A DNA stretch of 64,000 nucleotides from Ylistrum balloti (lineage: Eukaryota): contig NW_026782026.1 of assembly GCF_031769215.1 (NCBI RefSeq), positions 124,001-188,000 of the forward strand. Reading direction: 5' to 3'. The notes below the pieces were generated by a model that did no database searches, was not told where the DNA came from, and saw only the letters and a list, made by a program, of their open reading frames with translations. Below, piece after piece: positions 15,001 through 63,425 of the stretch. The stretch's first letter is position 1. The number at the start of each line of letters is the position of its first letter. The translations under genes and the position numbers were made by a program.

Positions 15001-18000
15001 TTTGTCTCTGTGATGTAAATCCTCGTAAACTTTTATATGATTTATGAAGTTAAATTAAAATGTAATATGGTAAAGAGTAACATGAATATAAGATGCCATA
15101 TAAATGCTTTGTACAAGATACATACATATATGGATTCCAATATTCTGACCTTAAACTCATTTTCAAAATCAGATATTTATAGTTTAAGAAATTTACAGTA
15201 AAATACATTTTATGTCTACTTTAATGTCTAGAGAAACTTGTGATACTGTGAATAGATACCTTGTATCCAGCTGTGGCAGCTGAGGATGGAACTGTTATTT
15301 CTCCAAGGTGCCAGACATTCCCATCATTGTTAGACATTGTAAAACCAGCTCTCCCTAATTGGCCGCCAGTCTGTGGAAACAGTGATTTCAATATACGGCA
15401 TTGTTTAAGAAATTTTTAAAAGATAAAATTATCATTTATAACATGTGCAGATTTTCCTCAGATTTGAGGAAGTGAACCGTGTGTTCCTGTTGTTTAATTA
15501 TCAAATTTGATTGAATGACAGTCATATTTGATTAAATTCTGTAAAACAATCGGAGTACATTACATGGTATACTTCATCCCCTGCCTTTGTATTTTAAATG
15601 ATCTATTTCTATCCTTCTCGTAACCCTAGAAACAAACTACTGATCAAGCTTATACACCAGCATCCCTTCTTTTGGGTGATTCAATCTTACGGGCATCTCT
15701 TCTTTTGGGTGATTCAACCCTATGGGCATCCCTTCTTTTTGGTGATTCAACCCTATGGGCATCCCTTCCTTTGGGTGATTCAGCCCTATGGGCATCTCTT
15801 CTTTTGGGTGATTCAACCCTATGGGCATCTCTTCTTTTGGGTGATTCAACCCTATGGGCATCTTTTCTTTTGGGTGATTCAGACCTATGGGCATCTCTTC
15901 TTTTGGGTGATTCAACCCTATGGGCATCCCTTCCTTTGGGTGATTCAGCCCTATGGGCATCTCTTCTTTTGGGTGATTCAACACTATCAGCATCCCTTCT
16001 TTTGGGTGATTCAACTCTATGGGCATCCCTTCCTTTGGGTGATTCAGCTCTATGGACATCCCTTCCTTTGGGTGATTCAACTCTATGGATATCCCTTCCT
16101 TTGGGTGATTCAACCCTATGGGCATCCCTTCCTTTGGGTGATTCAACTCTATGGACATCCCTTCCTTTGGGTAATACAATAATATGAACATCCCTTCCTT
16201 TAAGTAATACAATAATATGGGGATCCCTTCCTTTTGGTGATACAGCAAATCAATTGTTAAAACCGATATGCATTAACATGTCATAAGTTCACTGACCAAT
16301 TGTATAAAAAGAATGAAGAATGGTAATCAAACCTGTATGTATACGTTGAGTGCCCCTACGGTTGTGCCATATATATGGTAGTAAAACTGGACACACATGG
16401 CTTGGCTGTCAGTGTAAGTCGGAGAGATCAATCGTGCGGTATCCCCAGCTTGACGTGGAGCAGACGTCTCAATGTACATATAAAAGCCTACAAGATTTAA
16501 TATTAGATATCTTTATATTAATTTTACGAACAGAAAAGAATTATATATCTATCACAATAAACTTCTGGAGGGTCATGTGCCATACCATGTTTGGTATTGT
16601 ATGTGTGATCATTTGAGGGTCTGGACCTTACCTTGTCTGGTATTGTATGTGTTATCATTTGAGGGTCTGGACCTTACCTTGTCTGGTATTGTATGTGTTA
16701 TCATTTGAGGGTCTGGACCTTACCTTGTCTGGTATTGTATGTGTGATCATTTGAGGGTCTCGACCTTACCTTGTCTGGTATTGTATGTGTGATCATTTGA
16801 GGGTCTGGACCTTACCTTGTCTGGTATTGTATGTGTGATCATTTGAGGGTCTGGACCTTACCTTGTTTGGTATTGTATGTGTGATCATTTGAGGGTCTGG
16901 ACCTTACCATGTCTGGTATTGTATGTGTGATCATTTGAGGGTCTGGACCTTACCTTGTCAGGTATTGTATGTGTGATCATTTGAGGGTCTGGACCTTACC
17001 TTGTCAGGTATTGTATGTGTGATCATTTGAGGGTCTGATCTTTACCTTGTTTGGTATTGTATGTGTGATCATTTGAGGGTCCTGTCCCTGAAGATGATGT
17101 TGATCCTGAGTGTCTTGTCCAGTCAAACACGTCAGTTTTGTCCTGTGTATATCCACAGATATGAGCATCCTCAAAACTGCATGTCCTTCCACTGAGTGAC
17201 GATGACCCTGAAGACAAAGCACACATCAAAAATTCATTCAAAACAACTTTTGTGTTAACAAACCAGTAAGTAGTGTCACTTTGTGTTGTTGAGCCAGTAA
17301 CTCATGTCACTTTCGTGTTAATGAACCAATATCTTGTGTCACTTTGTATTGTTGAGCCAGTAACTCATGTCACTTTCATGCTAATGAACCAATATCTTGT
17401 GTCACTTTGTATTGTTGAGCCAGTAACTCATGTCACTTTTGTGCTAATGAACCAATATCTTGTGTCACTGTTGTGTTAATAAATTACTTTTGAATGAATT
17501 ATCTAATAACTCATGTCACTTTTGAGTAAAGGAACCAGTAATTTGTGTCACCTTTGTGTTAATGAACCAGTAATTTGTGTCATCTTTGTGTTAATGAACC
17601 AGTAATTTGTGTCAGCTTTGTGTTAATGAACCAGTAATTTGTGTCACCTTTGTGTTAATGAACCAGTAATTTGTGTCACCTTTGTGTTAATGAACCAGTA
17701 ATTTGTGTCACCTTTGTGTTAATGAACCAGTAATTTGAGTCATTTTTAAGATAATGAACCAGTAATTTGTGTCATCTTTGTGTTAATGAACCAGTAATCT
17801 TTGTGTTAATGAACCAGTAATTTGAGTCATTTTTAAGATAATGAACCAGTAATTTGTGTCATCTTTGTGTTAATGAACCAGTAATTTGTGTCACCTTTGT
17901 GTTAATGAACCAGTAATTTGTGTCATCTTTGTGTTAATGAACCAGTAATTTGAGTCATTTTTAAGATAATGAACCTGTAATTTGTGTCATCTTTGTTCTA

Positions 18001-21000
18001 ATAACCCAGTAACTTCAGTCATTTTTGTGTTAATGAATCACTTTTGTGTATCTGAGTCACTTTTGTGCTAATGAACCAGTACCTGAACATGTTCCACTTT
18101 TCAGCGTTACATCATCCATAGAAATATCACCATGGTAACCATCTGTCATAATGCCTTCAAATATGAGCTGAAACAGAAATGACAGAATCTATTTACTAAC
18201 AATCACATGACACTAAACAGCCAATAGAATTTCACTAATGGACCACAAGACCTCTACATGATAACACAGCAGTAGTTGTAGTTGGAACAGTTTTTAAATG
18301 ATTAAAACAAATAGCAATATTTCATCAGTAAAGCAAAACCTGAGCAATGCTATTTCATGAGAGATGCAAATCTTAATCTGACTATTTTAATGAACACCTA
18401 TTCTGTCAATTTTGGTAAGTTTTAGTACAATACTTGATGTCTCATAGCAACAGTATACATTCATGACAAAGCTTGTTTCGTTTTGAGAAACAATGAATTC
18501 ACGATCATGTTACAAATGGCCATCATGACTTTCCTTCCTTAACATTCCATATTAGACTTCGGATAGACCCAAAATATAACAACACTTAGTCAGCACTATC
18601 TCAGGATCATTTCATTTATATTCCAGCTCAATTTCACTTATGGAGCTTGAGAAGAAATCTAAAATGCAGAAAGATCTTGCCCAGCGGATGGCAAACAATG
18701 ACAAACAAAACATGATGGCTATATGTACATATTCCAATCTTTATGAAATAAAAAAGAAATTAACGTGTTTTATTCATAATAAGAACCAATATTGACAGGA
18801 ATAGATTAGTATCATACATAAGTACTGTACTTACATTGAAGGGAGCAGCGGGGGTGAAGGTCACATTTGCTTGCCTCCACTGGTTCCCTTGATTTCCAGA
18901 GCGTGTCCACTCTGGGGATCCAGGAGTTGCCCCTGTCTGTACATACAGATTCAGTGTCCCAATATCTGACCCGTACATATGATACCAGAAAATGAGGCAA
19001 TGTGGACCAGTCTGCCTCACTTGAACACTCTGTAGTAGTGCTTTTTCATTGACATGTCGCTGGGATGATTCAGTAAACACATAGTAACCATCTACAGTAT
19101 AAAATGGATTATAAATTACTATTAGTCATTATAACTACCATGTTATGACAACTTAGTATTTACATTTTGACAATATTTTGATAAGATTTATGAGCCTCAA
19201 CTAATGTCCAGACTGACTGTGTCACATTTCGAGCCCACCCTGTCAACAGACCTTATTGAACAAATCAAATTACAAAAAAAAAGGGGTGACCGATTATTGG
19301 AAACTGGCACAAAACGTTTCTTTACTACAAAATCATTTAGAAAATATTGAACAGACTTTGAGAACAGAAAGTCAAGGAAGACAAGCTTACAACAATTACT
19401 ATGAAACAGACTTTGAATCCTGATCAAAACAATGCTTATGATAAAGGACAGCAATAAATCAGAGGTTTATTTGCAGTAAGGATCAGGATGGTCAAAATCA
19501 ACCAGATGATAACATTACAATTCTTTTAACTAAAAGTGGGGGAGAAGGCTATAACAAGAGGTTTATCATAAGCCTATGAAGGTGGTAAAGAAATGCCTAC
19601 TTTTCAACTTTTGTTTTGCCTTCAAAGTAAGAAATGAATGATTAAAAGTTTTGCCTTCATAGTAAGAAATGGATGATTAAAAGAGTGTGGGCAGTTATTG
19701 GAACAAATACAGTAAATCATGTGTATCTGAAATACTGTAACGTATTAATTAAATGTAACAATAGTGTGATGTCTTAGATATGATAATGTCTATAATGTCA
19801 TATCAGACAAATTCACTGTGATTGTAGTCTTTATCCATGATGTCATGTAAAGTGTTATTTTTTAAATTCCAAAACTATTTTGATTATTTTTAACTATATC
19901 TTTTAGTAACACTGTTGTGTTTAAATCATTATTATTTTCTTTTTTTATGAAAGATGTCCTGACAAAGTAATAATGAAATACTGATGTTGATCATGAGGAA
20001 TGTGATGACATATCTATGTATTGAAGATTATAATGTCTAGAGATAATCATGAAATACTGATGCCATTATGATATTTATAAAATGGTGTAATGATGTTGAA
20101 AATGATATGTTGGTACCATGATGATGATTATGATGATAAATGGATACACATATGTGTGTGTATAATATGTGAAATTTTTCAAATAATAAAATGAATACAA
20201 AAAAAAATATTTTCATTTGCTATGGTTGTAAAATCCTTCAAGGCTATAGTTGGCCATGTTTATAACCATAACAACTATCAATAATGATAACTTCACTTGA
20301 TTGATTGACATATGCACCACACATAAAAAGTAATTTGAGATAAAGGACAAGAAATGTATGATATTTCAAAATAATATATTATAAATTTCTAAAAATAGTA
20401 ACTGTGACCTTGATCTTGACCTCTAAAAAACTACCTTTTCTGAGGTACTTTCTTAGTTAACTTCTGTATATAAAGATTCGTCAAAATTGCTATCAAAATA
20501 AAGTTGTTAGATTAATGGAAGTGAATTGAAAGAATCTGGATGCTGATACAAGTTGAGAAAAACAATCAAGGCAAACTTATATGCCCCCATTCCTCTGAAG
20601 AAATGGCTTGGACATAAAACATAATGACATATATAACTACATCATTTAATGATCATGTACTTAAATATTTGTTTATTTAAAGAATTAAAAGTTTTAGAGG
20701 AGCTGTCCATGTATGGACCAGTTTCAACTAAAACAACATTCTGTGAAAAAGGACATGCACAACTTTATGGTGTATCAATCTTGCAGAACAAATTTTGTTC
20801 CGTTGACGTGGAAGATTAGGAGTAGTTGTTTGAACAAATTGTCATAACAGACAACAACACACAACACAGATAGATGGACAGAAAACACAAATAGATAGAT
20901 AGACTAGCTTGTTCCTGTACAACCCTTTCAACTTCATCATTGAGAGAAGGGTTTATGAAACACCAGCACCGTATTACTTACGTCCAGAGGTGTGGTCAGA

Positions 21001-24000: not shown

Positions 24001-27000
24001 AATTTACAATGCTAATTTATTGGAAAATCACTTATTCCACATTAGAACTTAATATAAGTGACAAAGAAAAGCAGTTCAGTTGTCTTGTTGCCCTTACACT
24101 TCTACACTATCTTGAATGCTGTCATGTTGTCTTTTACACTTCTACACTATCTTGGCTGTTGCCTTGTTGCCCTTACACTTCTACACTATCTTGAATGCTG
24201 TCATGTTGTCTTTTACACTTTTACACTATCTTGGCTGTTGCCTTGTTGCCCTTACACTTCTACACTATCTTGATTGTTGCCTTGTTGCATTTACATTTCT
24301 ACACTATATGACTGCTGCCATGTTGCCCTTACACTTCTACACTATCTTGATTGTTGCTATGTTGTCTTTTAACTTCTACACTATCTTGAATGCTGTCATG
24401 TTGTCTTTTACACTTCTACACTATCTTGATTGTTGCTATGTTGTCTTTTAACTTCTACACTATCTTGAATGCTGTCATGTTGTCTTTTACACTTCTACAC
24501 TATCTTGGCTGTTGCCTTGTTGTCCTTACACTTCTACACTATCTTGAATGCTGTCATGTTGTCTTTTACACTTTTACACTATCTTGGCTGTTGCCTTGTT
24601 GCCCTTACACTTCTACACTATCTTGATTGTTGCCTTGTTGCATTTACATTTCTACACTATATGACTGCTGCCATGTTGCCCTTACACTTCTACACTATCT
24701 TGATTGTTGCTATGTTGTCTTTTAACTTCTACACTATCTTGAATGCTGTCATGTTGTCTTTTACACTTCTACACTATCTTGATTGTTGCTATGTTGTCTT
24801 TTAACTTCTACACTATCTTGAATGCTGTCATGTTGTCTTTTACACTTCTACACTATCTTGATTGTTGCTATGTTGTCTTTTAACTTCTACACTATCTTGA
24901 ATTTTGTCATGTTGTCTTTTACACTTTTACACTATCTTGGCTGTTGCCTTGTTGCCCTTACACTTCTACACTATCTTGACTGTTGCTTTGTTGCCCTTAC
25001 ACTTCTACACTATCTTGACTGTGGCCTTGCTGTCTTTAACACTTCTACCCTACCTCTATTGTTGCCATGGGTGTGGTCTGCTGAAGGACCTGTGTTTCTT
25101 GAACTTGTTGTTCCATGATGACGCATCCAGTCAAAATCATCCTGCCTCACATTAGTCCACCCACATAAGTTTTTATCAAAGTTACAGGTTCCTGAGGGAA
25201 AATTGATTTGCAATGTAGGTTTTGATTAAAGTTTTGGCCATGAGATATAAGAGCATCTGATGACAGTCACATTAAAAAAAAACATCAATTATGTTCATCT
25301 TTCTCTTCAGATGACATCTTTAGACACTAATTGTAATATTCTCTGAAGCTCTTTTGTTTGCTTATTACAAATGTTGTCTTAAAGACGAAAGGGATTTCAT
25401 CTATAAGTGAAAACTATTGAAATGTGACATAATGTAGACAACATCAATTGACCTTACCAATGGCTGGGCAGTTTCCTGAAGCGACACTAACATCATCAAT
25501 AGCTATGTCCCCCTTAAAGCCTTGTCCTCTCACTGCTTCAAACACAACCTGAAATAAAAAGGCAGAATGTTTCATTACACCTAACATATAATACTTCTAA
25601 TTTCTAGTAGATATACTGATCAAACCAATAACAAGGATATGAGTGTTTCTTTTTCTGACATATGTATTAAAACATGATTTGGTTCCTAAAGGCTCAAATT
25701 GATAAAAGTTAACTGGTTTAATAACTTAATGATACATACATTGAAAGCCCTTCCTCTCCGTAGTGTGACTTGAGCAATATTCCAGCCCACCCCTTGGTTG
25801 CCACTAAGGGTCCAGACAGGCTGCCCGAGAGAGTTTCTAGACTTGGTATATACATTGAGACTGTCCACACCAGTTCCATACATGCTGTAGTAAAAGGTCA
25901 AACACATGCTTCTTCGACCAGTGCTGGACGGACTGATAAGGCGAGCTTTTTGACCAGACTGAGTATTTGATGCATCAATGTACACATAATGACCTTTAAA
26001 AGACAATAAATGACCTTTTCATAAACCACTGAGAGTGTATTCATGGAGATTAAATGCAACCCAATCATAAGTTGTGACCTAAACTACAGTCAAAACTTGT
26101 TTGCTCAAATTCAAGGGATCATAGAAAATATTTCGACTTATCCATATTTCGGCTCAAACGGAATGTATAAATAAGGTTGACAATATCAGTTTTCTGACGT
26201 TGATTACGGATGAACGAAGTAGCGCTATGATAGCATGCAAACAGAGTAGTTTAATCTGATATTTGAAATGGCAGTAAATAAACAAATGAATTTATCCTTC
26301 TTTCTCCTTTTATTGTTTATTCATCCAAATAACAAAACATGTAATAACAACTCTAATAAAATGCAATCGTACTCGCGTCGTTTCGTTCACCACACACGTG
26401 TACAATACCCTTACTGACCAAGCACATAAGCACCATATATTTTACAGAATGACATAAAACAAAATTAAAATTTGCTTTTGATACACTATAAGAAAAAATG
26501 TATGAAGCCAAAGATCATATCAATATGACTTTACTATGAATAAGTAAATGTATGAAAAACGTGTCACTAGAAAAGTTTTAGCTGTTACAGAAATAATTGT
26601 ACAAGCACCAGACTTAACAAATCACACACTGATATAGACTCTATCATTGAAAAAAACTTCCAGCACTTCTTTGTCCGAACACTAAATCTAACGAAGTGCC
26701 TGATCTTAGTCCTTTAGTTAACAAGCTCAAAATTAGTTTCTTTCCGAATTGTGGGGATCACATTTCATCAACAAGAGATCCCAGAGGGATCTTGGCGCCC
26801 ACCATTTGAGGATCTGTTTTCAGTTCTTGAAGATTTGTTTATTTTTTTTTGTTTGTTACAGGTGTTGTAAATGTTCATGAACTGGTCTTCATTGAATGTA
26901 CTCAATGATGGCACAAGATATTTTTATTAAACACCTATTAGCAAATATCATGTGAAAAAGATCCCAAAGTATTATTAGATAGCAGTCAGTTACAGGTGGA

Positions 27001-30000
27001 TAATGGACAATATGCTTGTGCTGTATTACTGTCGACATCCAAGATGGCTGCCTGTGGGCCACCTTGATTTCAAATCAGTCCAAAAAAGGTATAATGCACA
27101 ACTAGGGACCAAGGGAAACCAATATCTATGAAATATCAGAAGGATCCATCCAGTATTTCCTCAGATATAGCAGTAACAAGATTTTACTCTCAAAATCCAA
27201 GATGGCTGCCTGTCAGCCATCTTGATTTCGGATCAATCCAAAAAGGTATAATGCACAACTTGGAACCAAAGGGAACCTGCATATGAAATTTGAGAAAGAT
27301 CCATCCAGTACTTTCCAAGAAATAGCAGTAACAAACTTTTACTTCCAAAATCCAAGATGGCTGCCTGTCGGCCATCTTGAATTCGAATCAGTCCAAAAAA
27401 GGTACAATGCACACCTAGGGACCAAGGGGAACTTGCATATGAAATTTGAGAAAGATCCATCCAGTACTTTCCAAGAAATAGCAGTAACAAACTTTTACAT
27501 CCAAAATCCAAGATGGCCACCTGTCGGCCATCTTGAATTCGAATCAGTCCAAAAAAGGTACAATGCACAACTAGGGACAAAGGGGAAACTGCATATGAAA
27601 TTTGAGGAAGATCCATCCGGTACTTTCTCAGAAATAGCGGTAACAAACTTTTACTTCCAAAATCCAAGATGGCCACTTGTTGGCCATCTTGAATTCGAAT
27701 CAGTCCAAAAAAGGTACAATGCACAACTAGGGACAAAGGGGAAACTGCATATGAAATTTTAGAAAGATCCATCCAGTACTTTTCCAGAAATAGCGGTAAC
27801 AAGAATTGTTTACGGACGGACAGACGGACCACGGACCTCGGACGGCAGGGCGATTTGAATATCCCACCATCTGATGATGGTGGGCTAAAAAGTATGTCCT
27901 GATTTAACAGGTTTCATTTTTATCATTCCTGAAGATGCACACAACCAAGCTAAATGTTTTTATGTTTTGTGTAAACGTGCTACTTTTTTAAGGTAAGTCA
28001 CTTCTAAAGAATGGTTACATTAATTAAGAAGCCAACCTTTAACTGGATAATTAAACTGTCAATTAATAGCAAGTGATCACATGTTATGTGAACGATGGAC
28101 GGACACCCCGTTATTAGCCATGTGTTATGCACAGAAGACTTTCTATTCTGTGTATGTATTGACTGATTTCGTCATAAGACGTGCAGATGTTTTTACAAAA
28201 ATTAATTTCAAGGCAACGAATGACTTTTCCCTTGCTTTACAACTGAAGGGAAAGAAAAATCACTGCAACTCAACCGAAATTTCGACTCAATGAAATTCCA
28301 GTCATCCAAACTAAAATTACGGAGATATAGAAGGGAAAAAATTAGGACTTGAAAATTATTTCCACTCAAACGGAATTTCAACTCAAGCAATTGTGATACG
28401 AGTTTCAATTGTATATAAATATATGGATGTACCTTCTACTGAAACTAATGAAATTTCGACTCAATGAAATTTGAGTCATCTAAACTTAAATTATGAAGAT
28501 ATAGAAGGGAAAAAATTAGGCCTTGAAAATTATTTCCACTCAAACGGAATTTCAACTCAAGCGATTGCGATACGAGTTTCAATTGTATATAAAATACATG
28601 GATGTACCTTCTACTGAACGAATACATTTCATACTTTCCTTCAGATAAACTTTAAAAGTGATCAATCTAGCACAAGTGAAGCAAAAATGTGAATTATTTA
28701 AAGACAAAGATAGGATGGACAAATAATGAACAACAAAGTGGAATCTGAACAGAATATTCAATGCTCAGTCATGTACCTTGTTGTGTACGGTAAGTATGAT
28801 CACTGTTGGGTCATGTTCCTTGTTGTGTACCATAAGTGTGGTCGTTGTAGGGGAACCTACCTTGTTGTGTACGGTAAGTATGATCACTGTTGGGTCATGT
28901 TCCTTGTTGTGTACCATAAGCGTGGTCATTGTAGGGGTACCTACCTTGTTGTGTACCATCAGTGTGGTCATTATTGGGGAACCTACCTTGTTGTGTACCA
29001 TAAGTGTGGTCATTGTTGGGGAACCTACCTTGTTGTGTACTATAAGCGTGGTCATTGTAGGGGAACCTACCTTGTTGTGTACAATAAGCGTGGTCATTGT
29101 AGGGGAACTACCTTGTTGTGTACCATAAGTGTGGTCATTGTTGGGGAACCTACCTTGTTGTGTACCTTAAGTGTGGTCATTGTTGGGGAACCTACCTTGT
29201 TGTGTACCATAAGTGTGGTCATTGTTGGGGAACCTACCTTGTTGTGTACCATAAGTGTGGTCATTGTTGGGGAACATACCTTGTTGTGTACCATAAGTGT
29301 GGTCATTGTTGGGGAACCTACCTTGTTGTGTACCTCAAGCGTGGTCATTGTTGGGGAACCTACCTTGTTGTGTACCATAAGTGTGGTCATTGTTGGGGAA
29401 CCTACCTTGTTGTGTACCATAAGTGTGGTCATTGTAGGGGAACCTACCTTGTTGTGTACCATAAGTGTGGTCATTGTTGGGGAACCTACCTTGTTGTGTA
29501 CCATAAGTGTGGTCATTGTTGGGGAACCTACCTTGTTGTGTACCTTAAGTGTGGTCATTGTAGGGGAACCTACCTTGTTGTGTACCATAAGTGTGGTCAA
29601 TGTTGGGGAACCTACCTTGTTGTGTACCATAAGTGTGGTCATTGTAGGGGAACCTACCTTGTTGTGTACCTTAAGTGTGGTCATTGTTGGGGAACCTACC
29701 TTGTTGTGTACCATAAGTGTGGTCATTGTAGGGGAACCTACCTTGTTGTGTACCATAAGTGTGGTCAATGTTGGGGAACCTACCTTGTTGTGTACCATAA
29801 GTGTGGTCATTGTAGGGGAACTACCTTGTTGTGTACCATAAGTGTGGTCAATGTTGGGGAACCTACCTTGTTGTGTACCATAAGTGTGGTCATTGTTGGG
29901 GAACCTACCTTGTTGTGTACCATAAGTGTGGTCATTGTAGGGGAACCTACCTTGTTGTGTACCATAAGTGTGGTCATTGTTGGGGAACCTACCTTGTTGT

Positions 30001-33000
30001 GTACCATAAGTGTGGTCATTGTTGGGGAACCTACCTTGTTGTGTACCATAAGTGTGGTCATTGTTGGGGAACCTACCTTGTTGTGTACCATAAGTGTGGT
30101 CAATGTTGGGGCCAGTTCCTGATGTAAGAGTAGCACCTGATGCCCGTGTCCAGTCAAAGTTGTCACTCTGATCCTGTGTATAGCCACAAATACGGCCATC
30201 TTCAAAGTTGCACTGAATACTGGTAGAAGTATTCACGCCTAAAACATAGGACAACTTGTATAATACCGGTGTAGCCACAATTTTCCTCCCTCTACACACC
30301 TCTATAGACACTCATATATTGTCATAATATACCTCTATAGACACTCAAATATTGTCATAATATACCTCTATAGACACTCAAATATTGTCATAATATACCT
30401 CTATAGACACTCAAATATTGTCATGATATTCCTCTACAGACACTCAAATATTGTCATAATATTCCTCTACAGACCCTCAAATATTGTCATAATAAACCTC
30501 TATAGACACTCAAATATTGTCATAATATACCTCTATAGACACTCAAATATTGTCATGATATTCCTCTACAGACACTCAAATATTGTCATAATATTCCTCT
30601 ACAGACACGCAAATATTGTCATAATGTTCCTCCATAGATACTCTGATATAACTCTACCATCCCTCTACACTCTCAGATATCACCATACTATCCCTCTACA
30701 CACTCAGATATAACCATACTATCCCTCTAAACACTCAGATATAACCACACCATCCCTCTACACACTCAGATATCACCATACTATCCCTCTAAATACTCAG
30801 ATATAACCATACTATCCCTCTAAACACTCAGATATAACCACACCATCCCTCTACACACTCAGATATCACCATACTATCCCTCTAAACACTCAGATATAAC
30901 CATACTATCCCTCTACACACTCAGATATAACTATACTATCCCTCTACACACTCAGGTTTGCTACATCCTCAGCAAAAGCAATAACATCCCTCACAACACA
31001 AGACATAGACCTAATATTCCTCCTGACACTTACCATTCTGGGGACATGGTCTGGTATTATACGTGATGTCATCAATAGCAATGTCTCCTTTGTAGCCCCG
31101 ACCTCGAACTGCTTCCAAAACAAACTGAAAAAACATCAGAATAACAGCATGTTATTGCTGAACTGCATGACAACAGAATCATTACAAAGATGAAAGAAAA
31201 AAACATACAGGGCTAATCATATACAAAGTATATATGTGTCATGTCTTCATATATTAGTACTAAGCATTGTCCCACAGACACTGCTCTAACCTCTGGAAAT
31301 GGACTTGTTATTTCCTGGAGGAGGGGTATGTAACCCTTATAAATACTAGTCGCAATATACCGGTCAGCTTGAGAGAACTTCTCTTTAGCTCCATCAGTTG
31401 AGCATCAGACTAGTAAACCTGAGGTCCCACATTTGAATCCTAGTGGATACACAGAAAAGAACCAGATAATGACCTCTGTCACACATATCATCGCAATGAA
31501 GTAAATCTATTTTCGATCTAGGATGAAGGAAGCAAACCTTGGCCCTAGTATTGACAGGAACATCGACTAGCGCATGCATCCATTTGTTTCCCTGGTCACC
31601 GCTGCGCTGCCATACAGGTTGGCCATTGTTGTTGTTTTTCTGTAGGTACACATTGAGGTTATTGACATGTTGGCCATACATATAGTACCAGAAGGACAAG
31701 CAGGCCTTGCTGCGGGCTGACACCCTCACTGCAGGACTCGTCAGCTGGGCATTAAAACCAGCGGTTCCTGCATTAGCCTCAAAGTACGCATAGTTTCCAT
31801 CTGTAAAACAAGTATAATGCTAATCAATGCTGTACTATGGGTACGCTCCCGAAGAAGATATTGTTCAAATGATGTGTGGTATTATACACGATCAAACAAC
31901 TCTAAGTATATAACTGAAAAGTGTTATAAATGTCAGAAAAAAACGATAAAACTCAGAGGAATAGAATTTCACTCTGAGTACTAAGAAGCTGGAAGCACGC
32001 TATGAATAATGAAGCTGTGCATGCATCTCCCGTGGTTACATAACACCTATGGAGCCAAGGCTGAAGAGGTCAAGCTCCAGATTACCCTGTACAGGTAGTG
32101 ATTGACAGGGGCTTCAATGATGACTGCATACATAATTATTATATTTATTATATGAATATCTTTTAATTGTATACATATTTAGTTATTTCAAATTTCTATT
32201 AAATCAAATATTAATTTAAGACCTATGTTTGGGCAAACATCAGTTATTTTCTCATAAAAACAAGGGCGTTTTTTACATAAAATTAAATCCCTAATGATCC
32301 AACACACGTACAGGTATAGCATGCATTGTTTTTTTCAATTATATAACTGTTAAGCAATTTATTTGCAAGTTTTAATATTCATGCAAATATGAATTAATAA
32401 TTTTAAAGTGGAAAATGTATATTAAACACAGCTTTTATGTAAAATGATGACCTCAATCAATCTTTAATTGAATTTATCCACAGGTAACTTTAATTGATCA
32501 CTCGTTATACCTGCCATATGCACATGGGTGCTCACTCAGGTTTGACCCCTCTACACTTAATCCTCTTATGTAATTGACTGGTTGGCCAGGTGTAATTAAC
32601 AACTTCACAGCTAACATAGCACCTATCATCATATTTTCACTATCACCTTAAATATATGCCTATATGCATTGTTAATATAACTTCTCTTGAGGGGGATCAA
32701 AATACTATAGGGGGGATCATTTTCTGATGGCCAGAAATATGATCCGGATCCTTTTCTGATGGGGGATCCAAATATGATATGACACCGGTACTAACTGAAT
32801 GGAGACAGAATTAATATTGTCCTATAAATTAAAGCATATATCATTTTAATTCTTTAGAAAATTAAAATCCTAACCGGTGTGAAATAACCACAAAGTACAA
32901 GACTGAAAAGTTATTGTTTTTTACATGAATACGTAGACTAAAATGTATTTAAAATGGAAAATGGGATTAAGCTTTTTTTTTAAACAAAAAATGCCACTTT

Positions 33001-37410: not shown

Positions 37411-37844
37411 CTCCCTCCGAGATCGCTGAGTGTATTCCGCGACATATATTTAGGATAATTCCAATGTAGATTACCACGAGAGAGACAGGAGAAAGACTGT
37501 TACATAGGCCCAGTGTATGTGTCTATATATCATCCACCCCTTTACGCTATCTCATCGGGTACAGTAGTCCACACAGATAAACAAGCCACAGTCCCTTTAT
37601 TATGTAAACTTCTGTTTCATAATAAATACCTTCGTATCAAATAAAGTACACTTTCTTATGACATTATTCTTTATGAAGATATTAGAATCGGGAATAAATA
37701 CTGGCGAGGAGGGATTTTAAAATGCATGTATAGAATCAGACGATAACACATAATTAGGTACAGATATTAAATATATCAAGTGTAGGCTCAAATGAGGATG
37801 AATTTTAATACAAATTTCGAGGAGGATAACATGCTTGGCCATAG

Positions 37845-38125
37845 ACTCAGCTCAAACGAAATTAGGTATAGACTCAGCTCAAACGAAATTAGGTATAGAC
37901 TCAGCTCAAAAGAAATTAGGTATAGACTCAACTCAAACGAAATTGGGTATAGACTCAACTCAAGTGAAATTAGGTATAGACTCAACTCAAACGAAATTAG
38001 GTATTGACTCAACTCAAACGAAATTAGGTATAGACTCAGCTCAAACGAAATTAGGTATTGACTCAGCTCAAACGAAATTAGGTAAAGACTCATATCAAAC
38101 GAAATTAGGTATAGACTCAGCTCAA
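37845..38125. repeat. 27-bp minisatellite
   Basis: aaacgaaattaggtatagactcagctc. Confidence 0.9.
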
Positions 38126-38299
38126 ATGATAAGGTTAAAGGAATTAAAGGTACAGACTGGGCATCGGAGATGTTGGTTACGTACAGGCTTGATTAAACAC
38201 CCATCCGGTGAGGAAACTCTAATAAGGCACAGACTTTATTAGACACTCAATGTGTACAGAATCTGGTGAGGGGACACTAATTAGATAAACATTCGTATG

Positions 38300-57700: not shown

Positions 57701-60700
57701 TATGACTGAATATAAATATTTTATCATGATCACCACTCCAGGGTAGGTACTTTAGCTGTAATATCATGATAAAATTATTATGAAGTCAGAAAACCTGATT
57801 AATCTTGTGTGATAGTTGATGGCCTGTTGATTGAATTTGTGTATATGGTGGTTCCATTATATTGTTTGTCAATAAAAGCTTATTATGAGATTTGTTTGTG
57901 AAATGTGTTTTGGTTAATATGTTAACTTCCTTTAATTGAGTAAAGATTGATATCATATGTGGCAGACATAGGTAAGAAATCAAACAGTAACATCTATCAT
58001 TGTGTTTATTATAGTCGTCTGTACCAGTTTATTGGAAATGTGTCCAAGTCGTCGGAGCCCCCAATGTTCCAGCCTCTGTTCCAGCAGTATGAAAACAAAC
58101 CAGGTACTCACTGCAGCCAACTGTAAATTTAGTACTGACCATCTGTGACCTGTGTGTTTATTTCTGTCAATGTGAACTGTCCATCTGTGACCTGTGTGTT
58201 TATTTCTGTCAATATTAACTGTCCATCTGTGATCTGTGTGTTTATTTCTGTCAATGTGAACTGTCCATCTGTGACCTGTGTGTTTATTTCTGTCAATGTG
58301 AACTGTCCATCTGTGATCTGTGTGTTTATTTCTGTCAATGTGATCTGTCCACCTGTGACCTGTGTGTTTATTTCTGTCAATGTGAACTGTCCACCTGTGA
58401 CCTGTGTGTTTATTTCTGTCAATGTGAACTGTCCATCTGTGACCTGTGTGATAATTTCGTAATGTGAACTGTCCATCTGTGACCTGTGTGATAATTTCGT
58501 AATGTGATCTGTCCACCTGTGACCTGTGTGATAATTTTGTAATGTGATCTGTCCACCTGTGACCTGTGTGATAATTTCGTAATGTGATCTGTCCACCTGT
58601 GACCTGTGTGTTTATTTCTGTCAATGTGATCTGTCCATCTGTGACCTGTGTGATAATTTCGTAATGTGAACTGTCCACCTGTGACCTGTGTGTTTATTTC
58701 GTAATGTGAACTGTCCACCTGTGACCTGTGTGATAATTTCGTAATGTGATCTGTCCACCTGTGACCTGTGTGTTTATTCTTGTCACTTTTCAGATTATAT
58801 TAATGGCCTCTGCTAAATATGGTCATTGCTTTTAAAAACATTTATCTCAACAGTTAAGATAAAGATTTGCTCAAACAATGTCATATTTCTATTGTGATTT
58901 TACATGTTTGATTTGTTCAGGAAACAGTAAGACTACATGAAAGGTTATAACCTGAGTTATTCATGTATGTGACTTGTGTTTAATACCTTAACAATAAAGT
59001 TGTTCTTGTGATAAACAGAACAGTTCCTAGAGCTGCCAGGAGACTTTGGAAATAGTGAATTAAAGCTGTACCTACCAAGATTCCGAGCTGCTCCAAAGAA
59101 TTTTGCTTGGATGACTGGTAAGTATCACCAGGAAGTAAATAATAATAACTGATTTAACAACTCTAGGAATTTTAAAGGTGAAAGTTCATCGGTTCACATT
59201 TCAAATGGAAATTCATTTTAGACCCTTTTTTGTCATATTTTTCAAGCAAATATATCAGAATATTGACATTTTTAGATCAAACTTAAATTCACATCCACTA
59301 TGTATCCATGACCTCCATGGTTACATCACAGTGCCATCTGTGAATGTGTGACGTCATTTCATTAAGTGACAATAAGCTGTAATACACACATGTGTAAATG
59401 CAAAAATATGACATAAGTATATTCCCTAAATAACAAGACAATCATGTGATTAATACAATCTGTTACCTGTAACTGAGTGAGATCGTGGGTATCTCGGTCG
59501 AGGGCTAAGATCCAGTAACATAATTCTAACTGATGCGTTAGCCAAGGTTAGATAGTTACAGGATCTTAGCCCGAGACTGTGATACCCCGATCTTGTTCAC
59601 TTACAGGTAGTAGTTTTTTCTCGCATCTACAGCCTCTTCACTTTTAAATATCGTTTGGATAGTGCTGCATAAACAATGTAGGCAGGAATTAAAAGTACTG
59701 TACTACCTTTCAAGAGGGCTGGTCGCATTTTCGATTTCATTTTAAATATGATTAATTAAATAGAATATCGTTGAAATTTCAACAACAACATAACCCATGC
59801 TTTTGTTGAAATACATGGGTTTAGGTGCCACTTATGCCTACACTTGGATGAATACACAGATGCATAAAGAATTACACGAAAACACGTGAGAGTATGATAC
59901 AGATCGGGCGAAATAGAAAAATCTAGGATGGAGTATTAATTGGGATATCTCTGTCTGAAGTGTGAGAAAAATATACCTGTGACAGGGACTTAGTCTGGAT
60001 AATCAGTACATATAGTGACAAGGACTAAGTCTAGATAATCAGTACATATAGTGACAGGGACTAAGTCTAGATAATCAGTATATATTGTGACAGGGACTAA
60101 GTCTAGAAAATCAATATATATAGTGACAGGGACTAAGTCTAGATAATCAGTATATATTGTGACAGGGACTAAGTCTAGATAATCAGTATATATAGTGACA
60201 GGGACTAAGTCTAGATAATCAGTATATATAGTGACAGGGACTTAGTCTAGATAATCAGTATATATAGTGACAGGGACTTAGTCTAGATAATCAGTATATA
60301 TAGTGACAGCGACTGAGTCTAGATAATCAGTATATATAGTGACAGCGACTGAGTCTAGATAATCAGTATATATAGTGACAGGGACTAAGTCTAGATAATC
60401 AGTATATATAGTGACAGGGACTAAGTCTAGATAATCAGTACATATAGTGACAGGGACTAAGTCTAGATAATCAGTATATATAGTGACAGGGACTAAGTCT
60501 AGATAGTAAGTATATAAAGTGACAGGGACTAAGTCTAGATAATCAGTACATATAGTGACAGGGACTAGGTCTAGATAATCAGTATATATAGTGACAGGGA
60601 CTAAGTCTAGATAATCAGTATATATAGTGACAGGAACATTGTCTGGATAATCAGTATATATAATGACAAGGACTAAGTCTAGATAATCAATATATATAGT

Positions 60701-63425
60701 GACAAATAGGCAAGTTTGATTGGACAAAACTAAGACTATGTTATGGTTGCTATTGTCTAGGACCAGGAGTGTATTACGGGGATGTAGAAGTGACTGGGGC
60801 TGCTGGCCCCTCCACCGTCACTACCAACACAAAGCTGATGCCTTACCCCCGTGACCCAGATGAGAGGGGCACTAACCCCCAGGCTATGGCTCTGACAGAA
60901 TTTCATGTCCTGTTGCTCTTCCCTGACCGGTAAGTAGTGATGTTTTATAGCCCCCTCTTCATTACATACAAAAGACATACGATTTACCTAGCTGACAGTT
61001 CTATACATTTATATAGACAATGTAACAACATAGTAGATAATTGTTATGTAATAGTCAGACCCTAAATAATTAATGTGTTTAAATCTACATGATTAAACAT
61101 AGGAAAACAAGGTAAGAAGAATGCCAATTACAAACATCAGCTTTGTGTAAACTTAGTAAACTTAGATAAATTATGTTTGACTACAATCATTTATCAGATG
61201 TAAGGTTCTGTATATGTACCAGCCTGACTAATACAATTATCTATCAGATGTAAGGTTCTGTATATGTACCAGCCTGACTAATACAATTATCTATCAGATG
61301 TAAGGTTCTGTATATGTACCAGCCTGACTAATACAATTATCTATCAGATGTAAGGTTCTGTATGTACCACTGAATTCATCATGTCTTTATCTGGTTTTGT
61401 ATTGTCAGGATCAAGGTTGTCTGCGTCCTGAATGAACAGCCAATCTTTGATGACATTTACCCTGATGTAAGTAGAGTTCTCTGATATTGATATTTTAAAT
61501 ATGTGTTTTATTATTTACACTTTTGTTTTAAGATAATTTGAAAGTTTTGTCTGGTTAATAATTCTCTAATACAGCCAATACCTGATCACCTCTTTAATTC
61601 TGCATGAAGACCTGGCAGAGTTTGGACCATGAACTAAGACTGTGTAAATTGTTTTACAGAGATTGGGTCGTTTACAAGGACTATGTAAATTGTTTTACAG
61701 AGATTGGGACGTTTACTAGGACTGTGTAAATTGTTTTACAGAGATTGGGTCGTTTACAAGGACTATGTAAATTGTTTTACAGAAATTGGGTCATTTACAA
61801 GGACTTTGTAAATTGTTTTACAGAGATTGGGTCGTTTACTAGGACTATGTAAATTGTTTTACAGAAATTGGGTCATTTACAAGGACTTTGTAAATTGTTT
61901 TACAGAGGACTGACTATGTAAATTGTTTTACAGAAAGATAGGACTTTGTAAATTGTTTTACAGAGATTGGGTCGTTTACTAGGACTATGTAAATTGTTTT
62001 ACAGAAATTGGGTCATTTACAAGGACTTTGTAAATTGTTTTACAGAGATAGGGTCGTTTACTAGGACTGTGTAAATTGTTTTACAGAGATTGGGACGTTT
62101 ACTAGGACTATGTAAATTGTTTTACAGAGATTGGGACGTTTACAAGGACTGTGTAAATTGTTTTACAGAAATTGGGTCGTTTACAAGGACTGTGTAAATT
62201 GTTTTACAGAAATTGGGTCGTTTACTAGGACTATGTAAATTGTTTTACAGAGATTGGGACGTTTACTAGGACTTTGCAAAGACCCGCTTAAAGGCAGTTT
62301 ATGGACTTTTACATCTCAGAGTGTTTTCAAGTACAAAATTGTACGAGAATCACGGTAAGTTTGGTCACAGAGGCAAGGGGAACCCTGCCCTCAGATGGTG
62401 ACAGAGGGGATAAAGGTTCTGTATGTAGATCATTGTTATTGTAATACTTACTCAGGGTTAGGAATAAGTAAGTTAAATCTATCCTTATAGCTCTATCTTT
62501 GTTAAGTTCACATTTCAGGCTGAAGTGCTTTATGTATTAGTTTATTAAATCTTATTCTAAAGTTTTGTCTAATATTCTTTCACTATTAATATCAGATATT
62601 GAATTCTAGACAGATATTATTGTTTCCAGGAGTGCTCTGCAGGTCTGTTTCTTATTCTTAAAAATTTTGTTGATATACAATATATACTGTATATATGACA
62701 TGATTTACTTCTGGTGGTTACCTGTTAAGCTTTGACATAAACTGAAATATTCTTGTGATAGAGTATTGTAATCACCAAACAAGAACATTTTATTATATCT
62801 GTAATGGTATATCTCATTCTTTTACTCCAGGGATGTATGGCAGATGTACCTTGATATGGGCAAGTTTGATCTTGCCAAGGATTACTGTCGGGTTGGTTTT
62901 ATATTTCTGTACACTGTCCCCAACCTCATTCTTGTTAGGATGAGTAAGATGATAACGAGTTCTTCATGCTCTACCAAAATTTGTTTATCCATCTGTCCAT
63001 CTTTCCATCCGTCCTATATATCTGGATCATAACTTTTCTCACAGTTAAACCAAGATCATGAAAATTTTTATACATTGGTCATATTAAGGTGATGTGCAGT
63101 GTACCAAATTTAATTACTCTTTGTTAAAATTGTATGCCAAATAAGGTCGTGTTCGGGGAGCATTTATCAGTTTCACTGATACTTTTGTATATACATATAT
63201 GATCTTCATTGTCAAGTAATCATTTTTAAGTCATTACATTTACACAGTACTTTGTAAATGTTAGAATTTTCTGCAGTCACAAGCCTTTATCATTGCAACT
63301 TTCTTCCATTTCTCTTTATATCTATGAAAACAATTGATATTAATTATCCTTTACTTGTAGGACAACATGGCCCAGATGGACCGTGTACTTACCAAACAGG
63401 CAGAGTATTTGTTCACTAATGAGAG
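51629..63425 (+). CDS. VPS18: Vacuolar protein sorting-associated protein 18 (HOPS/CORVET core subunit), 3'-partial, 14 coding exons in window
   Basis: Join: 51629-51712, 52125-52198, 53144-53253, 53671-53819, 54397-54481, 54669-54748, 57630-57742, 58015-58103, 59019-59117, 60761-60929, 61409-61466, 62251-62354, 62831-62891, 63361-63425; GT-AG, phases consistent. Translation MASILDQYEE...DVPIFSKKKVNF...KVYKIFLDPTGRHLIVS...VGWN...GAILLGTSKGLIFETEL...FAWMTGPGVYYG...LTEFHVLLLF...RDVWQMYLDMGKFDLAKDYC matches my recollection of metazoan VPS18 (MASILDEY..., LTQFH, RDVW..YLDM..FDLAK.YC). Confidence 0.95.
52125..52198 (+). CDS. VPS18: VPS18 coding exon 2
   Basis: IGPGFIDARLDTDVPIFSKKKVNF; |gtgagt donor. 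Confidence 0.9.
52795..53040. repeat. 39-bp minisatellite
   Basis: gacaggataacatcctcaattgtcctgatgatgatacat. Confidence 0.9.
53144..53253 (+). CDS. VPS18: VPS18 coding exon 3
   Basis: PPDPITHMAVCNNFLVISMTSNILLRLDLEHPETPD. Confidence 0.9.
53671..53819 (+). CDS. VPS18: VPS18 coding exon 4
   Basis: EVELPRAVEDKVYKIFLDPTGRHLIVSMESTENYYLSRNSKKPRPIGKLK. Confidence 0.93.
54035..54160 (+). mobile_element. SINE 3' fragment (Deu/Nin-domain-like mollusc SINE)
   Basis: gtgggttttccccgggta...cccacactaagacccctcacgcg...gccaacaagagtgattt...aaataaataaagttta resembles, from memory, the central-3' part of mollusc SINEs; not database-checked. Confidence 0.5.
54397..54481 (+). CDS. VPS18: VPS18 coding exon 5
   Basis: GHHVHAVGWNLQNANDNTTGAILLGTSK. 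Confidence 0.92.
54669..54748 (+). CDS. VPS18: VPS18 coding exon 6
   Basis: GLIFETELTDNENSRFFQGSLDQYLKQ. Confidence 0.9.
55050..55290. repeat. 44-bp minisatellite
   Basis: ttgtacaacactttgaattcagttgtacagtccttggaattcat. Confidence 0.88.
57045..57315. mobile_element. Insertion with ~33-bp inverted repeats resembling decayed minimal hammerhead motifs (Penelope-like pLTR relic)
   Basis: 57098-57130 (minus: ctgaagaaaacccgagaggtgaaactggttgac) and 57277-57309 (plus: ctgaagaagcctgagaggtcaaaaccagttgac); interrupts a tactactagaatgt satellite. Confidence 0.5.
57320..57610. repeat. tactactagaatgt(c/a)-type satellite
   Basis: 17/18-bp alternating units; degenerate continuation at about 56860-57045. Confidence 0.85.
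57630..57742 (+). CDS. VPS18: VPS18 coding exon 7
   Basis: LFNLGKSKAVAITGLEFDRMPSDAMTEYKYFIMITTP. Confidence 0.9.
58015..58103 (+). CDS. VPS18: VPS18 coding exon 8
   Basis: RLYQFIGNVSKSSEPPMFQPLFQQYENKP. Confidence 0.9.
58135..58780. repeat. 42-bp minisatellite (plus shorter variants)
   Basis: ctgtccatctgtgacctgtgtgtttatttctgtcaatgtgaa. Confidence 0.92.
59019..59117 (+). CDS. VPS18: VPS18 coding exon 9
   Basis: EQFLELPGDFGNSELKLYLPRFRAAPKNFAWMT. Confidence 0.92.
59464..59609. other. ~146-bp fold-back palindrome (probable MITE end/hairpin element)
   Basis: left arm tacctgtaactgagtgagatcgtgggtatctcggtcgagggctaagatccagtaac...ctaac vs reverse complement of right arm tacctgtaagtgaacaagatcggggtatcacagtctcgggctaagatcctgtaactatctaac. 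Confidence 0.85.
59975..60705. repeat. 36-bp minisatellite
   Basis: gtgacagggactaagtctagataatcagtatatata. Confidence 0.93.
60761..60929 (+). CDS. VPS18: VPS18 coding exon 10
   Basis: GPGVYYGDVEV...KLMPYP...AMALTEFHVLLLFPD. Confidence 0.93.
61195..61365. repeat. 50-bp tandem repeat, about 3.5 copies
   Basis: tcagatgtaaggttctgtatatgtaccagcctgactaatacaattatcta. Confidence 0.88.
61409..61466 (+). CDS. VPS18: VPS18 coding exon 11
   Basis: RIKVVCVLNEQPIFDDIYPD. Confidence 0.9.
61640..62275 (+). repeat. 41-bp tandem array of VPS18 splice acceptor + exon-12 5' end (16 acceptors)
   Basis: unit tgtaaattgttttacag|agattgggacgtttactaggacta; AG ends at 61659, 61700, 61741, 61782, 61823, 61864, 61905, 61933, 61963, 62004, 62045, 62086, 62127, 62168, 62209, 62250. 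Confidence 0.95.
62251..62354 (+). CDS. VPS18: VPS18 coding exon 12 (acceptor is the last of 16 tandem copies)
   Basis: RLGRLLGLCKDPLKGSLWTFTSQSVFKYKIVRES; only the acceptor ending at 62250 gives a stop-free frame. Confidence 0.9.
62831..62891 (+). CDS. VPS18: VPS18 coding exon 13
   Basis: RDVWQMYLDMGKFDLAKDYCR. Confidence 0.93.
62940..63188 (-). mobile_element. Short HINE/pearl-like element (minus orientation)
   Basis: minus 5' end acaaaag + hairpin tatcagt-gaa-actgata + aatgctcccc; (gacg/gatg)n tract at 62985-63013. Confidence 0.55.
63361..63425 (+). CDS. VPS18: VPS18 coding exon 14
   Basis: DNMAQMDRVLTKQAEYLFTNE. Confidence 0.88.

What the first reader, a model, noticed from the sequence alone, without database searches (positions are those of the whole stretch)
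16580..62275. Recurrent amplification of splice junctions into tandem arrays in two neighbouring genes
Seen: four arrays have units that are copies of a real exon-intron boundary. Three derive from the donor that ends the first exon of a MAM domain (MAM-B, 32 x 42 bp; MAM-E, 11 x 46 bp; MAM-C, about 24 x 39 bp), and one from a VPS18 acceptor (16 x 41 bp). The three MAM arrays sit at the same homologous position (after ...DHT..G) but have different units, so they arose independently. They show different outcomes: an in-frame ladder (MAM-B), out-of-frame decoys (MAM-E, VPS18), and donors inactivated by GT>AT (MAM-C). Short exon/intron microhomologies are visible at two array ends (gaccctc at 16568-16574 vs the exon; actaagactgtgtaaa at about 61633 vs exonic actaggactttgcaaa). 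Inference: a microhomology-seeded duplication process that creates splice-site VNTRs, which could tune isoform length or productive mRNA dose by copy number. Tandem duplication creating new splice sites is a known concept, but I know of no description of such large, repeated junction arrays; novelty is unverified.
Basis: partly seen in the sequence, partly recalled or inferred. Interest (0 to 1): 0.85.

Follow-up and report, generated by a model that had tools for sequence, protein, structure and literature searches.

The report
Tandem repeats copied from splice junctions
Four tandem repeat arrays in a scallop multi-MAM gene and in VPS18 are real copies of an exon end plus its splice site, a repeat type already known from human genes (F7, IFI6) and amphioxus; related scallops carry such arrays at the same three MAM splice donors.

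Summary
Of 53 mapped splice junctions in the window, exactly four are reiterated in an adjacent array:
- MAM-B donor: 42 bp, exon copy plus 31 units
- MAM-E donor: 46 bp, exon copy plus 10 units
- MAM-C donor: about 39.5 bp, 25 units, only about 14 nt of exon, authentic GT lost in the copies
- VPS18 acceptor: 41 bp, 16 acceptors

Details need correcting. The MAM-B ladder stays in frame for only the first six extra donors. The "microhomologies" cannot be told apart from partial end units.

The class is not new. Junction-spanning minisatellites are described for human F7, IFI6 (6-16), CBS, LMNB2 and PDGF, and as amphioxus "mirages". This scan has also reported the same class many times elsewhere in this genome.

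In this window alone, four junction arrays is not more than its repeat density predicts (38% of bases; 2.3-2.9 expected).

What is new: the Pecten maximus orthologue has junction arrays at the same three MAM donors (P = 0.0012), and Argopecten irradians has one at the MAM-C donor. This holds despite about 0.6 substitutions per neutral site. So these donors are either hot spots or carry very long-lived, exon-anchored arrays.

No RNA data could be obtained, so splice-site use and any tuning role remain untested.

The parts
30077..30238 (-). MAM-B exon 1 (ends ...DHTYGTQQ + 1 nt; authentic donor aag|gtaggt after 30077)
   Evidence: ORF and splice sites; MAM Pfam match for the corresponding MAM-E exon 1 piece; tblastn
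28774..30111 (-). MAM-B donor array. The 42-bp unit is the last 35 nt of the exon plus 7 nt of intron. It holds the exon copy plus 31 units. Twenty-five copies are identical to the authentic donor, two are gtagtt and one gtatgt. Two distal 'V' units are only about 76% like the main unit. Identity to the exon copy falls with distance from the exon.
25740..25993 (-). MAM-B exon 2 (phase-1 acceptor; GHYVYIDAS...)
25054..25191 (-). MAM-C exon 1 (donor gag|gtaggg after 25054)
24079..25069 (-). MAM-C donor array: 25 units of 38-40 bp arranged as 79-bp dimers and a 353-bp higher-order repeat. About 14 nt of exon is included. The first unit is diverged. Copies read agat where the junction reads aggt, and about 9 units carry another GTAAGG.
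17046..17207 (-). MAM-E exon 1 (authentic donor aag|gtaaag after 17046)
16568..17081 (-). MAM-E donor array. The 46-bp unit is 34 nt of exon plus 12 nt of intron. It holds the exon copy plus 10 units. Unit 1 carries an in-frame TGA, so all decoy donors are unproductive.
   Evidence: seen in four DNA runs
16333..16487 (-). MAM-E exon 2
61409..61466 (+). VPS18 exon upstream of the acceptor array
61638..62280 (+). VPS18 acceptor array. The 41-bp unit is the last 22 nt of the intron (ttgttttacag) plus the first 19 nt of the exon. It holds 16 acceptors and only the last gives an open frame. A 123-bp higher-order repeat is present.
62251..62354 (+). VPS18 exon fed by the array (RLGRLLGLCKDPLKG...)
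   Evidence: neighbouring exons match PF05131
17249..18082 (-). 32-bp array filling the whole intron between MAM-D exon 3 and MAM-E exon 1. It starts at the first intron base but includes no exon sequence, so it abuts the junction without spanning it.

Best explanation
These are junction-spanning ('mirage'-type) minisatellites.

Origin. A short local tandem duplication copied the end of an exon, its splice site and a few intron bases. For VPS18 it copied the end of an intron and the start of the exon. Unequal exchange or replication slippage then expanded the duplicate into an array.

What is shown:
- local origin from the gene's own junction
- higher-order repeat structure
- a polarity of unit age in MAM-B
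- presence in independent DNA samples (MAM-E)
- arrays at the same MAM exon-1 donors in another scallop genus

What is inferred:
- The arrays are tolerated because the exon-proximal site is the one used. That is the first donor, as shown experimentally for human F7, or the last acceptor. The decoys then stay silent or give frameshifted, stop-containing RNAs that are degraded.
- Because the exon-borne copy is kept intact by selection on the protein, it can act as a lasting master copy. The array can regrow from it. That would explain persistence or recurrence at the same donors.
For: Local origin: the exon-side 24 nt recurs 24/24, 24/24 and 23/24 in the adjacent arrays. Only 4 of 53 junctions behave this way.

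Expansion by unequal exchange: 79/353-bp, 123-bp and 84-bp higher-order periods.

Age layers: in MAM-B, identity to the exon copy falls with distance (rho -0.54, P 0.0015). Two distal units keep the codon states agt and tac, which the P. maximus exon has and the present exon has lost.

Reality: the MAM-E borders and raised unit word depth appear in 4 runs.

Tolerance: exon-internal arrays are absent (3.2 expected, 0 seen, P 0.04), whereas junction arrays are not depleted. Annotated proteins of P. maximus, A. irradians and M. yessoensis use the first donor at every MAM.

Recurrence: the P. maximus orthologue (P0017, L001) has junction arrays at the B, C and E exon-1 donors, and also at the D exon-2 acceptor, the donor of E's last exon and the F exon-1 donor. 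All 3 of ours fall among its 6, out of about 47 junctions (hypergeometric P 0.0012). A. irradians (L002) has them at the C exon-1 donor, the B exon-1 acceptor and the C exon-3 acceptor.

The MAM-E units of this species and P. maximus share a register: 34 nt of exon starting at the Pro codon, plus 12-13 nt of intron. The P. maximus unit matches our exon better (9/12) than its own exon (6/12) over the first 12 nt.

Precedent for first-donor choice: F7 (PMC1557585).
Against: No RNA evidence was obtained, so which sites are used here is inferred only from reading frames and from other species' gene models.

Within the window, 4 junction arrays against 2.3-2.9 expected is not significant.

Unit borders differ between species. 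For B: 35+7 nt here, against an 80+16-nt primary unit collapsed to 42 bp in P. maximus. For C: 14, 10 and 43 nt of exon in the three species. The intron-derived parts of the C units show no significant similarity between species. Common descent is therefore supported only for MAM-E.

A. irradians lacks arrays at the B and E donors.

Only MAM-E could be checked in reads.
Confidence: 0.8

Rival explanations
1. Functional splice-site VNTR. Copy number tunes isoform length (the MAM-B in-frame ladder) or the share of productive mRNA (decoys in MAM-E and VPS18), and selection keeps the arrays for that purpose.
For: Seven MAM-B donors are in frame and open. Decoy donors in MAM-E match U1 better than the authentic one. 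Arrays recur at the same donors across genera. In human IFI6 and CBS the two proximal pseudo-donors are used as well (PMC1557585).
Against: There are no RNA data. The ladder breaks frame after 6 units and later units carry stops. That is decay, which is not expected of a selected ladder. Gene models in three other scallops use only the first donor. Copy number, unit borders and even presence differ freely between species (11 vs 47 vs 0 for MAM-E). The same genome carries very many such arrays in unrelated genes. That pattern fits a mutational by-product.
Confidence: 0.1
2. Pure coincidence of a very high minisatellite density with a dense set of junctions. There is no site preference at all.
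For: 38% of the window is tandem arrays. A uniform-seed model expects 2.3-2.9 junction-spanning arrays and 4 are seen (P 0.2-0.34).
Against: Three of the four sit on the 8 MAM exon-1 donors (P about 0.009, post hoc). All three are shared with P. maximus (P 0.0012). Across three species, junction arrays occur at 8 of 14 exon-1 donors of the B/C/E/F/H type and at 0 of 9 of the A/D/G type. Fisher P is about 0.006 by my own count; the data points are not independent if the arrays are inherited.
Confidence: 0.08
3. One ancestral array that predates the MAM domain duplications and was inherited by MAM-B, MAM-C and MAM-E. In that case the three arrays are not independent.
For: MAM-B and MAM-E are sister domains (support 83/88). 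Their units start within 1 nt of the same Gly-Pro codons. Both 3' flanks contain catgac.
Against: B and E are only 53% identical in protein. Introns are not alignable even between orthologues. Units are 94-100% identical to their own exon. The third member of the group (MAM-H) has no array. A. irradians lacks arrays at the B and E donors. The intron parts differ (7 vs 12 nt). A start within 1 nt has a chance of about 7%.
Confidence: 0.04
4. Assembly artefact or a dispersed satellite/transposon family that happens to lie next to exons.
For: Repeat arrays are error-prone in assemblies. Only MAM-E could be checked in reads.
Against: The MAM-E borders and raised unit depth appear in 4 runs. The same class is present in two independent assemblies of other species. 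Units are exact copies of the adjacent exon and not of a dispersed consensus.
Confidence: 0.02

Closest known systems
Human F7 intron 7 VNTR (37 bp, 5-9 copies)
   Same: The first unit spans the exon-intron boundary, so identical donors are reiterated in the intron. Only the most upstream donor is used, and the pseudo-sites are functional but silent (PMC1557585).
   Different: F7 copies only 4 nt of exon and has few copies. Here 14-35 nt of exon are copied, up to 31 times (47 in P. maximus). Usage is untested here.
Human IFI6 (6-16) intron 2 minisatellite; also CBS IVS13, LMNB2, PDGF
   Same: A large array of reiterated donors (the authentic one plus 25 pseudo-sites in 6-16). The authentic donor and the two proximal pseudo-sites are used, as cited in PMC1557585.
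   Different: Taken from that paper's introduction; I did not read the primary papers. The MAM-B unit is 42 bp (14 aa) and its frame is lost after six units.
Amphioxus 'mirages' (Adh3, globin genes BflGb6 and BflGb9)
   Same: [quoted passage not shown] They vary in length between haplotypes, evolve in concert with the boundary units excluded, and regular splicing is kept (PMC3087553).
   Different: A different phylum. Units there are 10-160 bp with few copies. Sharing of position between genera, and recurrence in paralogous domains of one gene, were not reported there.
Rogers model: intron gain by tandem duplication of an AGGT-containing segment
   Same: Tandem duplication creates extra splice sites (discussed in PMC3087553).
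   Different: No new intron or exon is evident here. The copies lie inside an existing intron.

Membership tests
Junction-spanning minisatellite (mirage / F7-IVS7 type) | Head-to-tail array of a 10-200-bp unit, three or more copies | tested here: met
   TRF; unit tables
Junction-spanning minisatellite (mirage / F7-IVS7 type) | One end unit spans a real exon-intron boundary, so the splice site is reiterated in the intron | tested here: met
   B, E and VPS18 are unambiguous. MAM-C is met only through register-specific matches, and its copies have lost the authentic GT.
Junction-spanning minisatellite (mirage / F7-IVS7 type) | Only the exon-proximal site (or it plus one or two neighbours) is used in mature mRNA | not testable with these tools
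   The single run search returned DNA runs only. Reading frames and other species' gene models agree with it but do not show it.
Junction-spanning minisatellite (mirage / F7-IVS7 type) | Copy-number variability (VNTR behaviour) | tested here: inconclusive
   Short-read contigs cannot count copies. Between species MAM-E has 11 vs 47 vs 0 copies.
Short-distance tandem splice sites (NAGNAG and the like) | Alternative sites a few nucleotides apart created by very short duplication | tested here: not met
   Sites are 39-46 nt apart in long arrays
Dispersed satellite or transposon-borne repeat | Unit belongs to a family found at many unrelated loci and is not derived from the flanking sequence | tested here: not met
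   Units are exact copies of the adjacent exon end. No other junction or array in the window matches them.

The most novel reading that the evidence does not exclude
Exon-anchored minisatellites at particular MAM splice donors have been retained, or continually regenerated, across scallop genera separated by about 0.6 substitutions per neutral site because they do something. They might act as clusters of U1-binding decoy donors that enforce use of the first donor. They might instead act as a copy-number-dependent drain into nonsense-mediated decay or into length-variant MAM proteins.
Probability: 0.1. Interest if true: 0.8.

Novelty: new member of a known kind. Interest (0 to 1): 0.42.

Why it matters
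The arrays are natural experiments in splice-site choice. The real donor is followed by up to 28 intact GT donors here, 25 of them letter-identical (46 in P. maximus), or the real acceptor is preceded by 15 identical ones. The genes are conserved and include the housekeeping gene VPS18.

If only the proximal site is used, the first-come rule shown for human F7 holds in molluscs and at much larger scale.

Sharing of array positions between genera raises a testable evolutionary idea. A repeat whose master copy lies in a selected exon may be effectively immortal. It also marks such introns as places where gene prediction and assembly tend to fail. One possible example is the P. maximus gene model, which ends inside a donor array.

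Tried and rejected
- RNA evidence. My single run search used kind 'any' and returned only five DNA contig runs, so no splice usage could be read.
As the tool suggested, I then laid the 11-copy MAM-E stretch instead. MAM-B, MAM-C and VPS18 were therefore not checked in reads.
- The search for homologous proteins with the MAM-B exon-2 ORF found nothing.
- The M. yessoensis loci are not on record.
- VPS18 orthologous loci could not be reached. There is no full-length query by reference, and no VPS18 lies within the 10-kb flank of L001.
- I tested whether other arrays next to junctions copy exon sequence: D exon-3 donor, E exon-1 acceptor, A exon-1 acceptor, F exon-1 and exon-2 donors, F exon-3 acceptor, and the VPS18 arrays at 58134 and 61182. 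None does. The D exon-3 array copies the intron only from its first base.
- I considered a common origin of the MAM-B and MAM-E arrays before the domain duplication, based on the same start codon and the shared catgac. I judged it unlikely, given 53% aa identity and unalignable introns.
- I looked for similarity between species in the intron-derived parts of the MAM-C units. There is none beyond the first 9 nt.
- Literature search for scallop or bivalve reports of this repeat class found none in the held library.

Full report
**Setting.** The window is extremely rich in minisatellites. TRF lists 82 rows, which collapse to 39 distinct arrays covering 38% of the bases.

The minus strand carries a multi-MAM gene. 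Eight MAM units lie in the window, named A to H in transcript order. Each is split by a phase-1 intron after the DHT motif (Pfam PF00629). The plus strand from about 53100 carries VPS18 (PF05131). Earlier notes of this scan identify the organism as a scallop. The closest proteins found here are from Pecten maximus, Argopecten irradians and Mizuhopecten yessoensis, each about 80% identical. The window therefore comes from a fourth scallop lineage.

I mapped 53 splice junctions and asked which 28-nt junction windows recur nearby. Only the MAM-B, MAM-C and MAM-E exon-1 donors and one VPS18 acceptor do. The exon-side 24 nt recurs perfectly or nearly so for B, E and VPS18, and no shuffle reaches this.

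MAM-C is weaker. A free local alignment is not significant. However, the last 14 exon bases recur 11/14 only at offsets that are multiples of the period. The copies read agat where the junction reads aggt.

Unit tables give the anatomy:
- MAM-B: the exon copy plus 31 units of 42 bp (35 nt of exon plus 7 nt of intron). Twenty-five donors are identical to the authentic aag|gtaggt.
- MAM-E: the exon copy plus 10 units of 46 bp (34 plus 12 nt).
- VPS18: 16 copies of ttgttttacag plus 19 nt of exon.

- Two MAM-B units are 41 nt. Only the authentic donor and the next six keep the frame, and four later units carry TAA or TGA.
- In MAM-E the first unit has an in-frame TGA, so every decoy donor is unproductive. 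The authentic donor (gtaaag) matches U1 less well than nine of the copies (gtaagg).
- All 15 upstream VPS18 acceptors lead to stop codons.
- The 'microhomologies' at the array ends are what the partial last unit of any array looks like. They cannot be counted as separate evidence for a seeding mechanism.

**Reality of the arrays.** The reads tool refuses stretches with more than 12 copies, so only MAM-E could be laid. In four independent DNA runs, one labelled as a second organism, contigs run from unique sequence into both ends of the array. Unit contigs have two- to five-fold higher word depth than the flanks. Two other scallop assemblies show the same class (below).

**Is it more than chance?** Within the window, it is not. 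If array seeds fell uniformly on the non-array genic sequence, 2.3-2.9 would span a junction, and 4 do (P 0.2-0.34). By contrast, 3.2 seeds are expected wholly inside exons and none is seen (P 0.04). Junction-spanning arrays are therefore tolerated where exonic ones are not.

What is non-random is position. Three of the four sit on the eight MAM exon-1 donors (P about 0.009, post hoc).

**Orthologues.** A full-library search with MAM-B exon 2, followed by blastp, gave P0017. This is a five-MAM P. maximus protein, colinear with MAM-A to MAM-E at 77-86% identity. Its locus is L001. The A. irradians orthologue P0151 gave L002.

Between the window and L001 only exons and the junction arrays align. 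Fourfold-degenerate sites differ at 41%, a Jukes-Cantor distance of 0.60.

Even so, P. maximus has junction-spanning arrays at all three of the same donors:
- MAM-B: a 96-bp duplication of 80 nt of exon plus 16 nt of intron, followed by six 42-bp deletion derivatives
- MAM-C: 86 bp x 42
- MAM-E: 47 bp x 47

It has three more: the D exon-2 acceptor (61 bp x 14), the donor of E's last exon (45 bp x 36) and the F exon-1 donor (70 bp x 8). All three of ours fall among its six, out of about 47 shared junctions, which gives P = 0.0012.

A. irradians has arrays at the C exon-1 donor (70 bp x 12), the B exon-1 acceptor (46 bp x 8) and the C exon-3 acceptor. It has none at the B or E donors.

Across the three species, exon-1 donors of the B/C/E/F/H type carry arrays in 8 of 14 cases. 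Those of the A/D/G type, whose intron lies 6 nt earlier, carry arrays in 0 of 9.

**Old or recurrent?** There is evidence for age:
- The MAM-E units here and in P. maximus have the same register. Both take 34 nt of exon from the Pro codon plus 12-13 nt of intron, and the intron parts match at 9 of 13 positions.
- Over its first 12 nt, the P. maximus unit matches our exon (9/12) better than its own (6/12). It looks like a fossil of an older exon sequence.
- In MAM-B, identity to the exon copy falls with distance. Two distal units, only about 76% like the main unit, keep codon states that the P. maximus exon has and our present exon has lost.

There is also evidence for repeated births:
- Unit borders differ between species for MAM-B and MAM-C.
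- The intron-derived parts of the MAM-C units show no significant similarity between species.
- A. irradians lacks two of the arrays.

Among paralogues, independent origin is the better reading. B/E and C/F are sister domains but are only 53% and 44% identical. Each array matches its own exon.

I therefore regard these donors as either hot spots or carriers of long-lived arrays whose exon-borne copy acts as a protected master. The present data do not decide between the two, except to favour inheritance for MAM-E.

**Mechanism.**
- Shown: local duplication of the junction; expansion with higher-order periods (79/353, 123 and 84 bp) typical of unequal exchange; age layering.
- Inferred: the exon-proximal site is the one used. 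This rests on reading frames, on first-donor gene models in three other scallops, and on the F7 experiments. Those showed a 5'-to-3' scanning choice of the most upstream of several identical donors, even against stronger pseudo-sites (PMC1557585).
- Not tested: actual usage here, leakage into decay, and copy-number polymorphism.

**Comparison with what is known.** The class is well described. The F7 paper's introduction lists minisatellites whose first unit spans an exon-intron boundary in IFI6/6-16 (authentic donor plus 25 pseudo-sites, with the authentic and the two proximal ones used), CBS, LMNB2, PDGF and F7. Amphioxus 'mirages' cover both donor and acceptor boundaries, with concerted evolution and normal splicing.

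This scan has also reported the same class repeatedly in other parts of this genome, including arrays of hundreds of copies. The present arrays are new members of a known kind. The added point of interest is recurrence at the same donors in paralogous domains and in orthologues of other genera.

**Verdict.** The novelty claim is not supported, and function is untested. Interest is moderate.

Noticed in passing
window 17249-18082 (-); L002 15117-15788: The whole intron between MAM-D exon 3 and MAM-E exon 1 is a 32-bp array that starts at the first intron base. The same intron in A. irradians is filled by an unrelated-looking 27-bp x 25 array.
   Followed up: partly
L001 38437-40052 and 19153-22438: The P. 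maximus gene model P0017 ends by reading into a 45-bp x 36 array copied from the donor of E's last exon. The A. irradians and M. yessoensis models splice on to MAM-F. This is either an annotation break or a real effect of the array. Separately, the P. maximus B exon-3 donor is followed by 126 units of 26 bp, each starting GTAAGA.
   Followed up: partly
window MAM exon-1 donors: 33211, 20982, 5251 versus 30077, 25054, 17046, 8012, about 674: The MAM exon-1 intron occurs in two registers 6 nt apart: after DHTxG+1 in A, D and G, and after DHTxxxxx+1 in B, C, E, F and H. Only the second kind carries junction arrays in any of the three species examined.
   Followed up: partly
window 8435-13009: A 4.6-kb array of a 14-bp unit (ACAACATACACCAA, about 330 copies) lies in the intron between MAM-E and MAM-F. 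It accounts for the extreme GC and AT skew there.
   Followed up: no
window 17089-17091: A three-base substitution in MAM-E exon 1 (Ser to Gly) appears in runs X1 and X3 but not X5. It is a multi-nucleotide polymorphism just upstream of the array.
   Followed up: no
window 1-33400 (-): The domain tree pairs B with E and C with F. The order A-B-C / D-E-F / G-H suggests the gene grew by duplication of a three-MAM module.
   Followed up: partly
window 25046-25054; L001 about 22802; L002 about 11277: The first 9 intron bases after MAM-C exon 1 (gtagggtag, with a ta insertion in P. maximus) are kept in three genera although the introns are otherwise unalignable. The G run next to the donor could be a splicing enhancer.
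   Followed up: no
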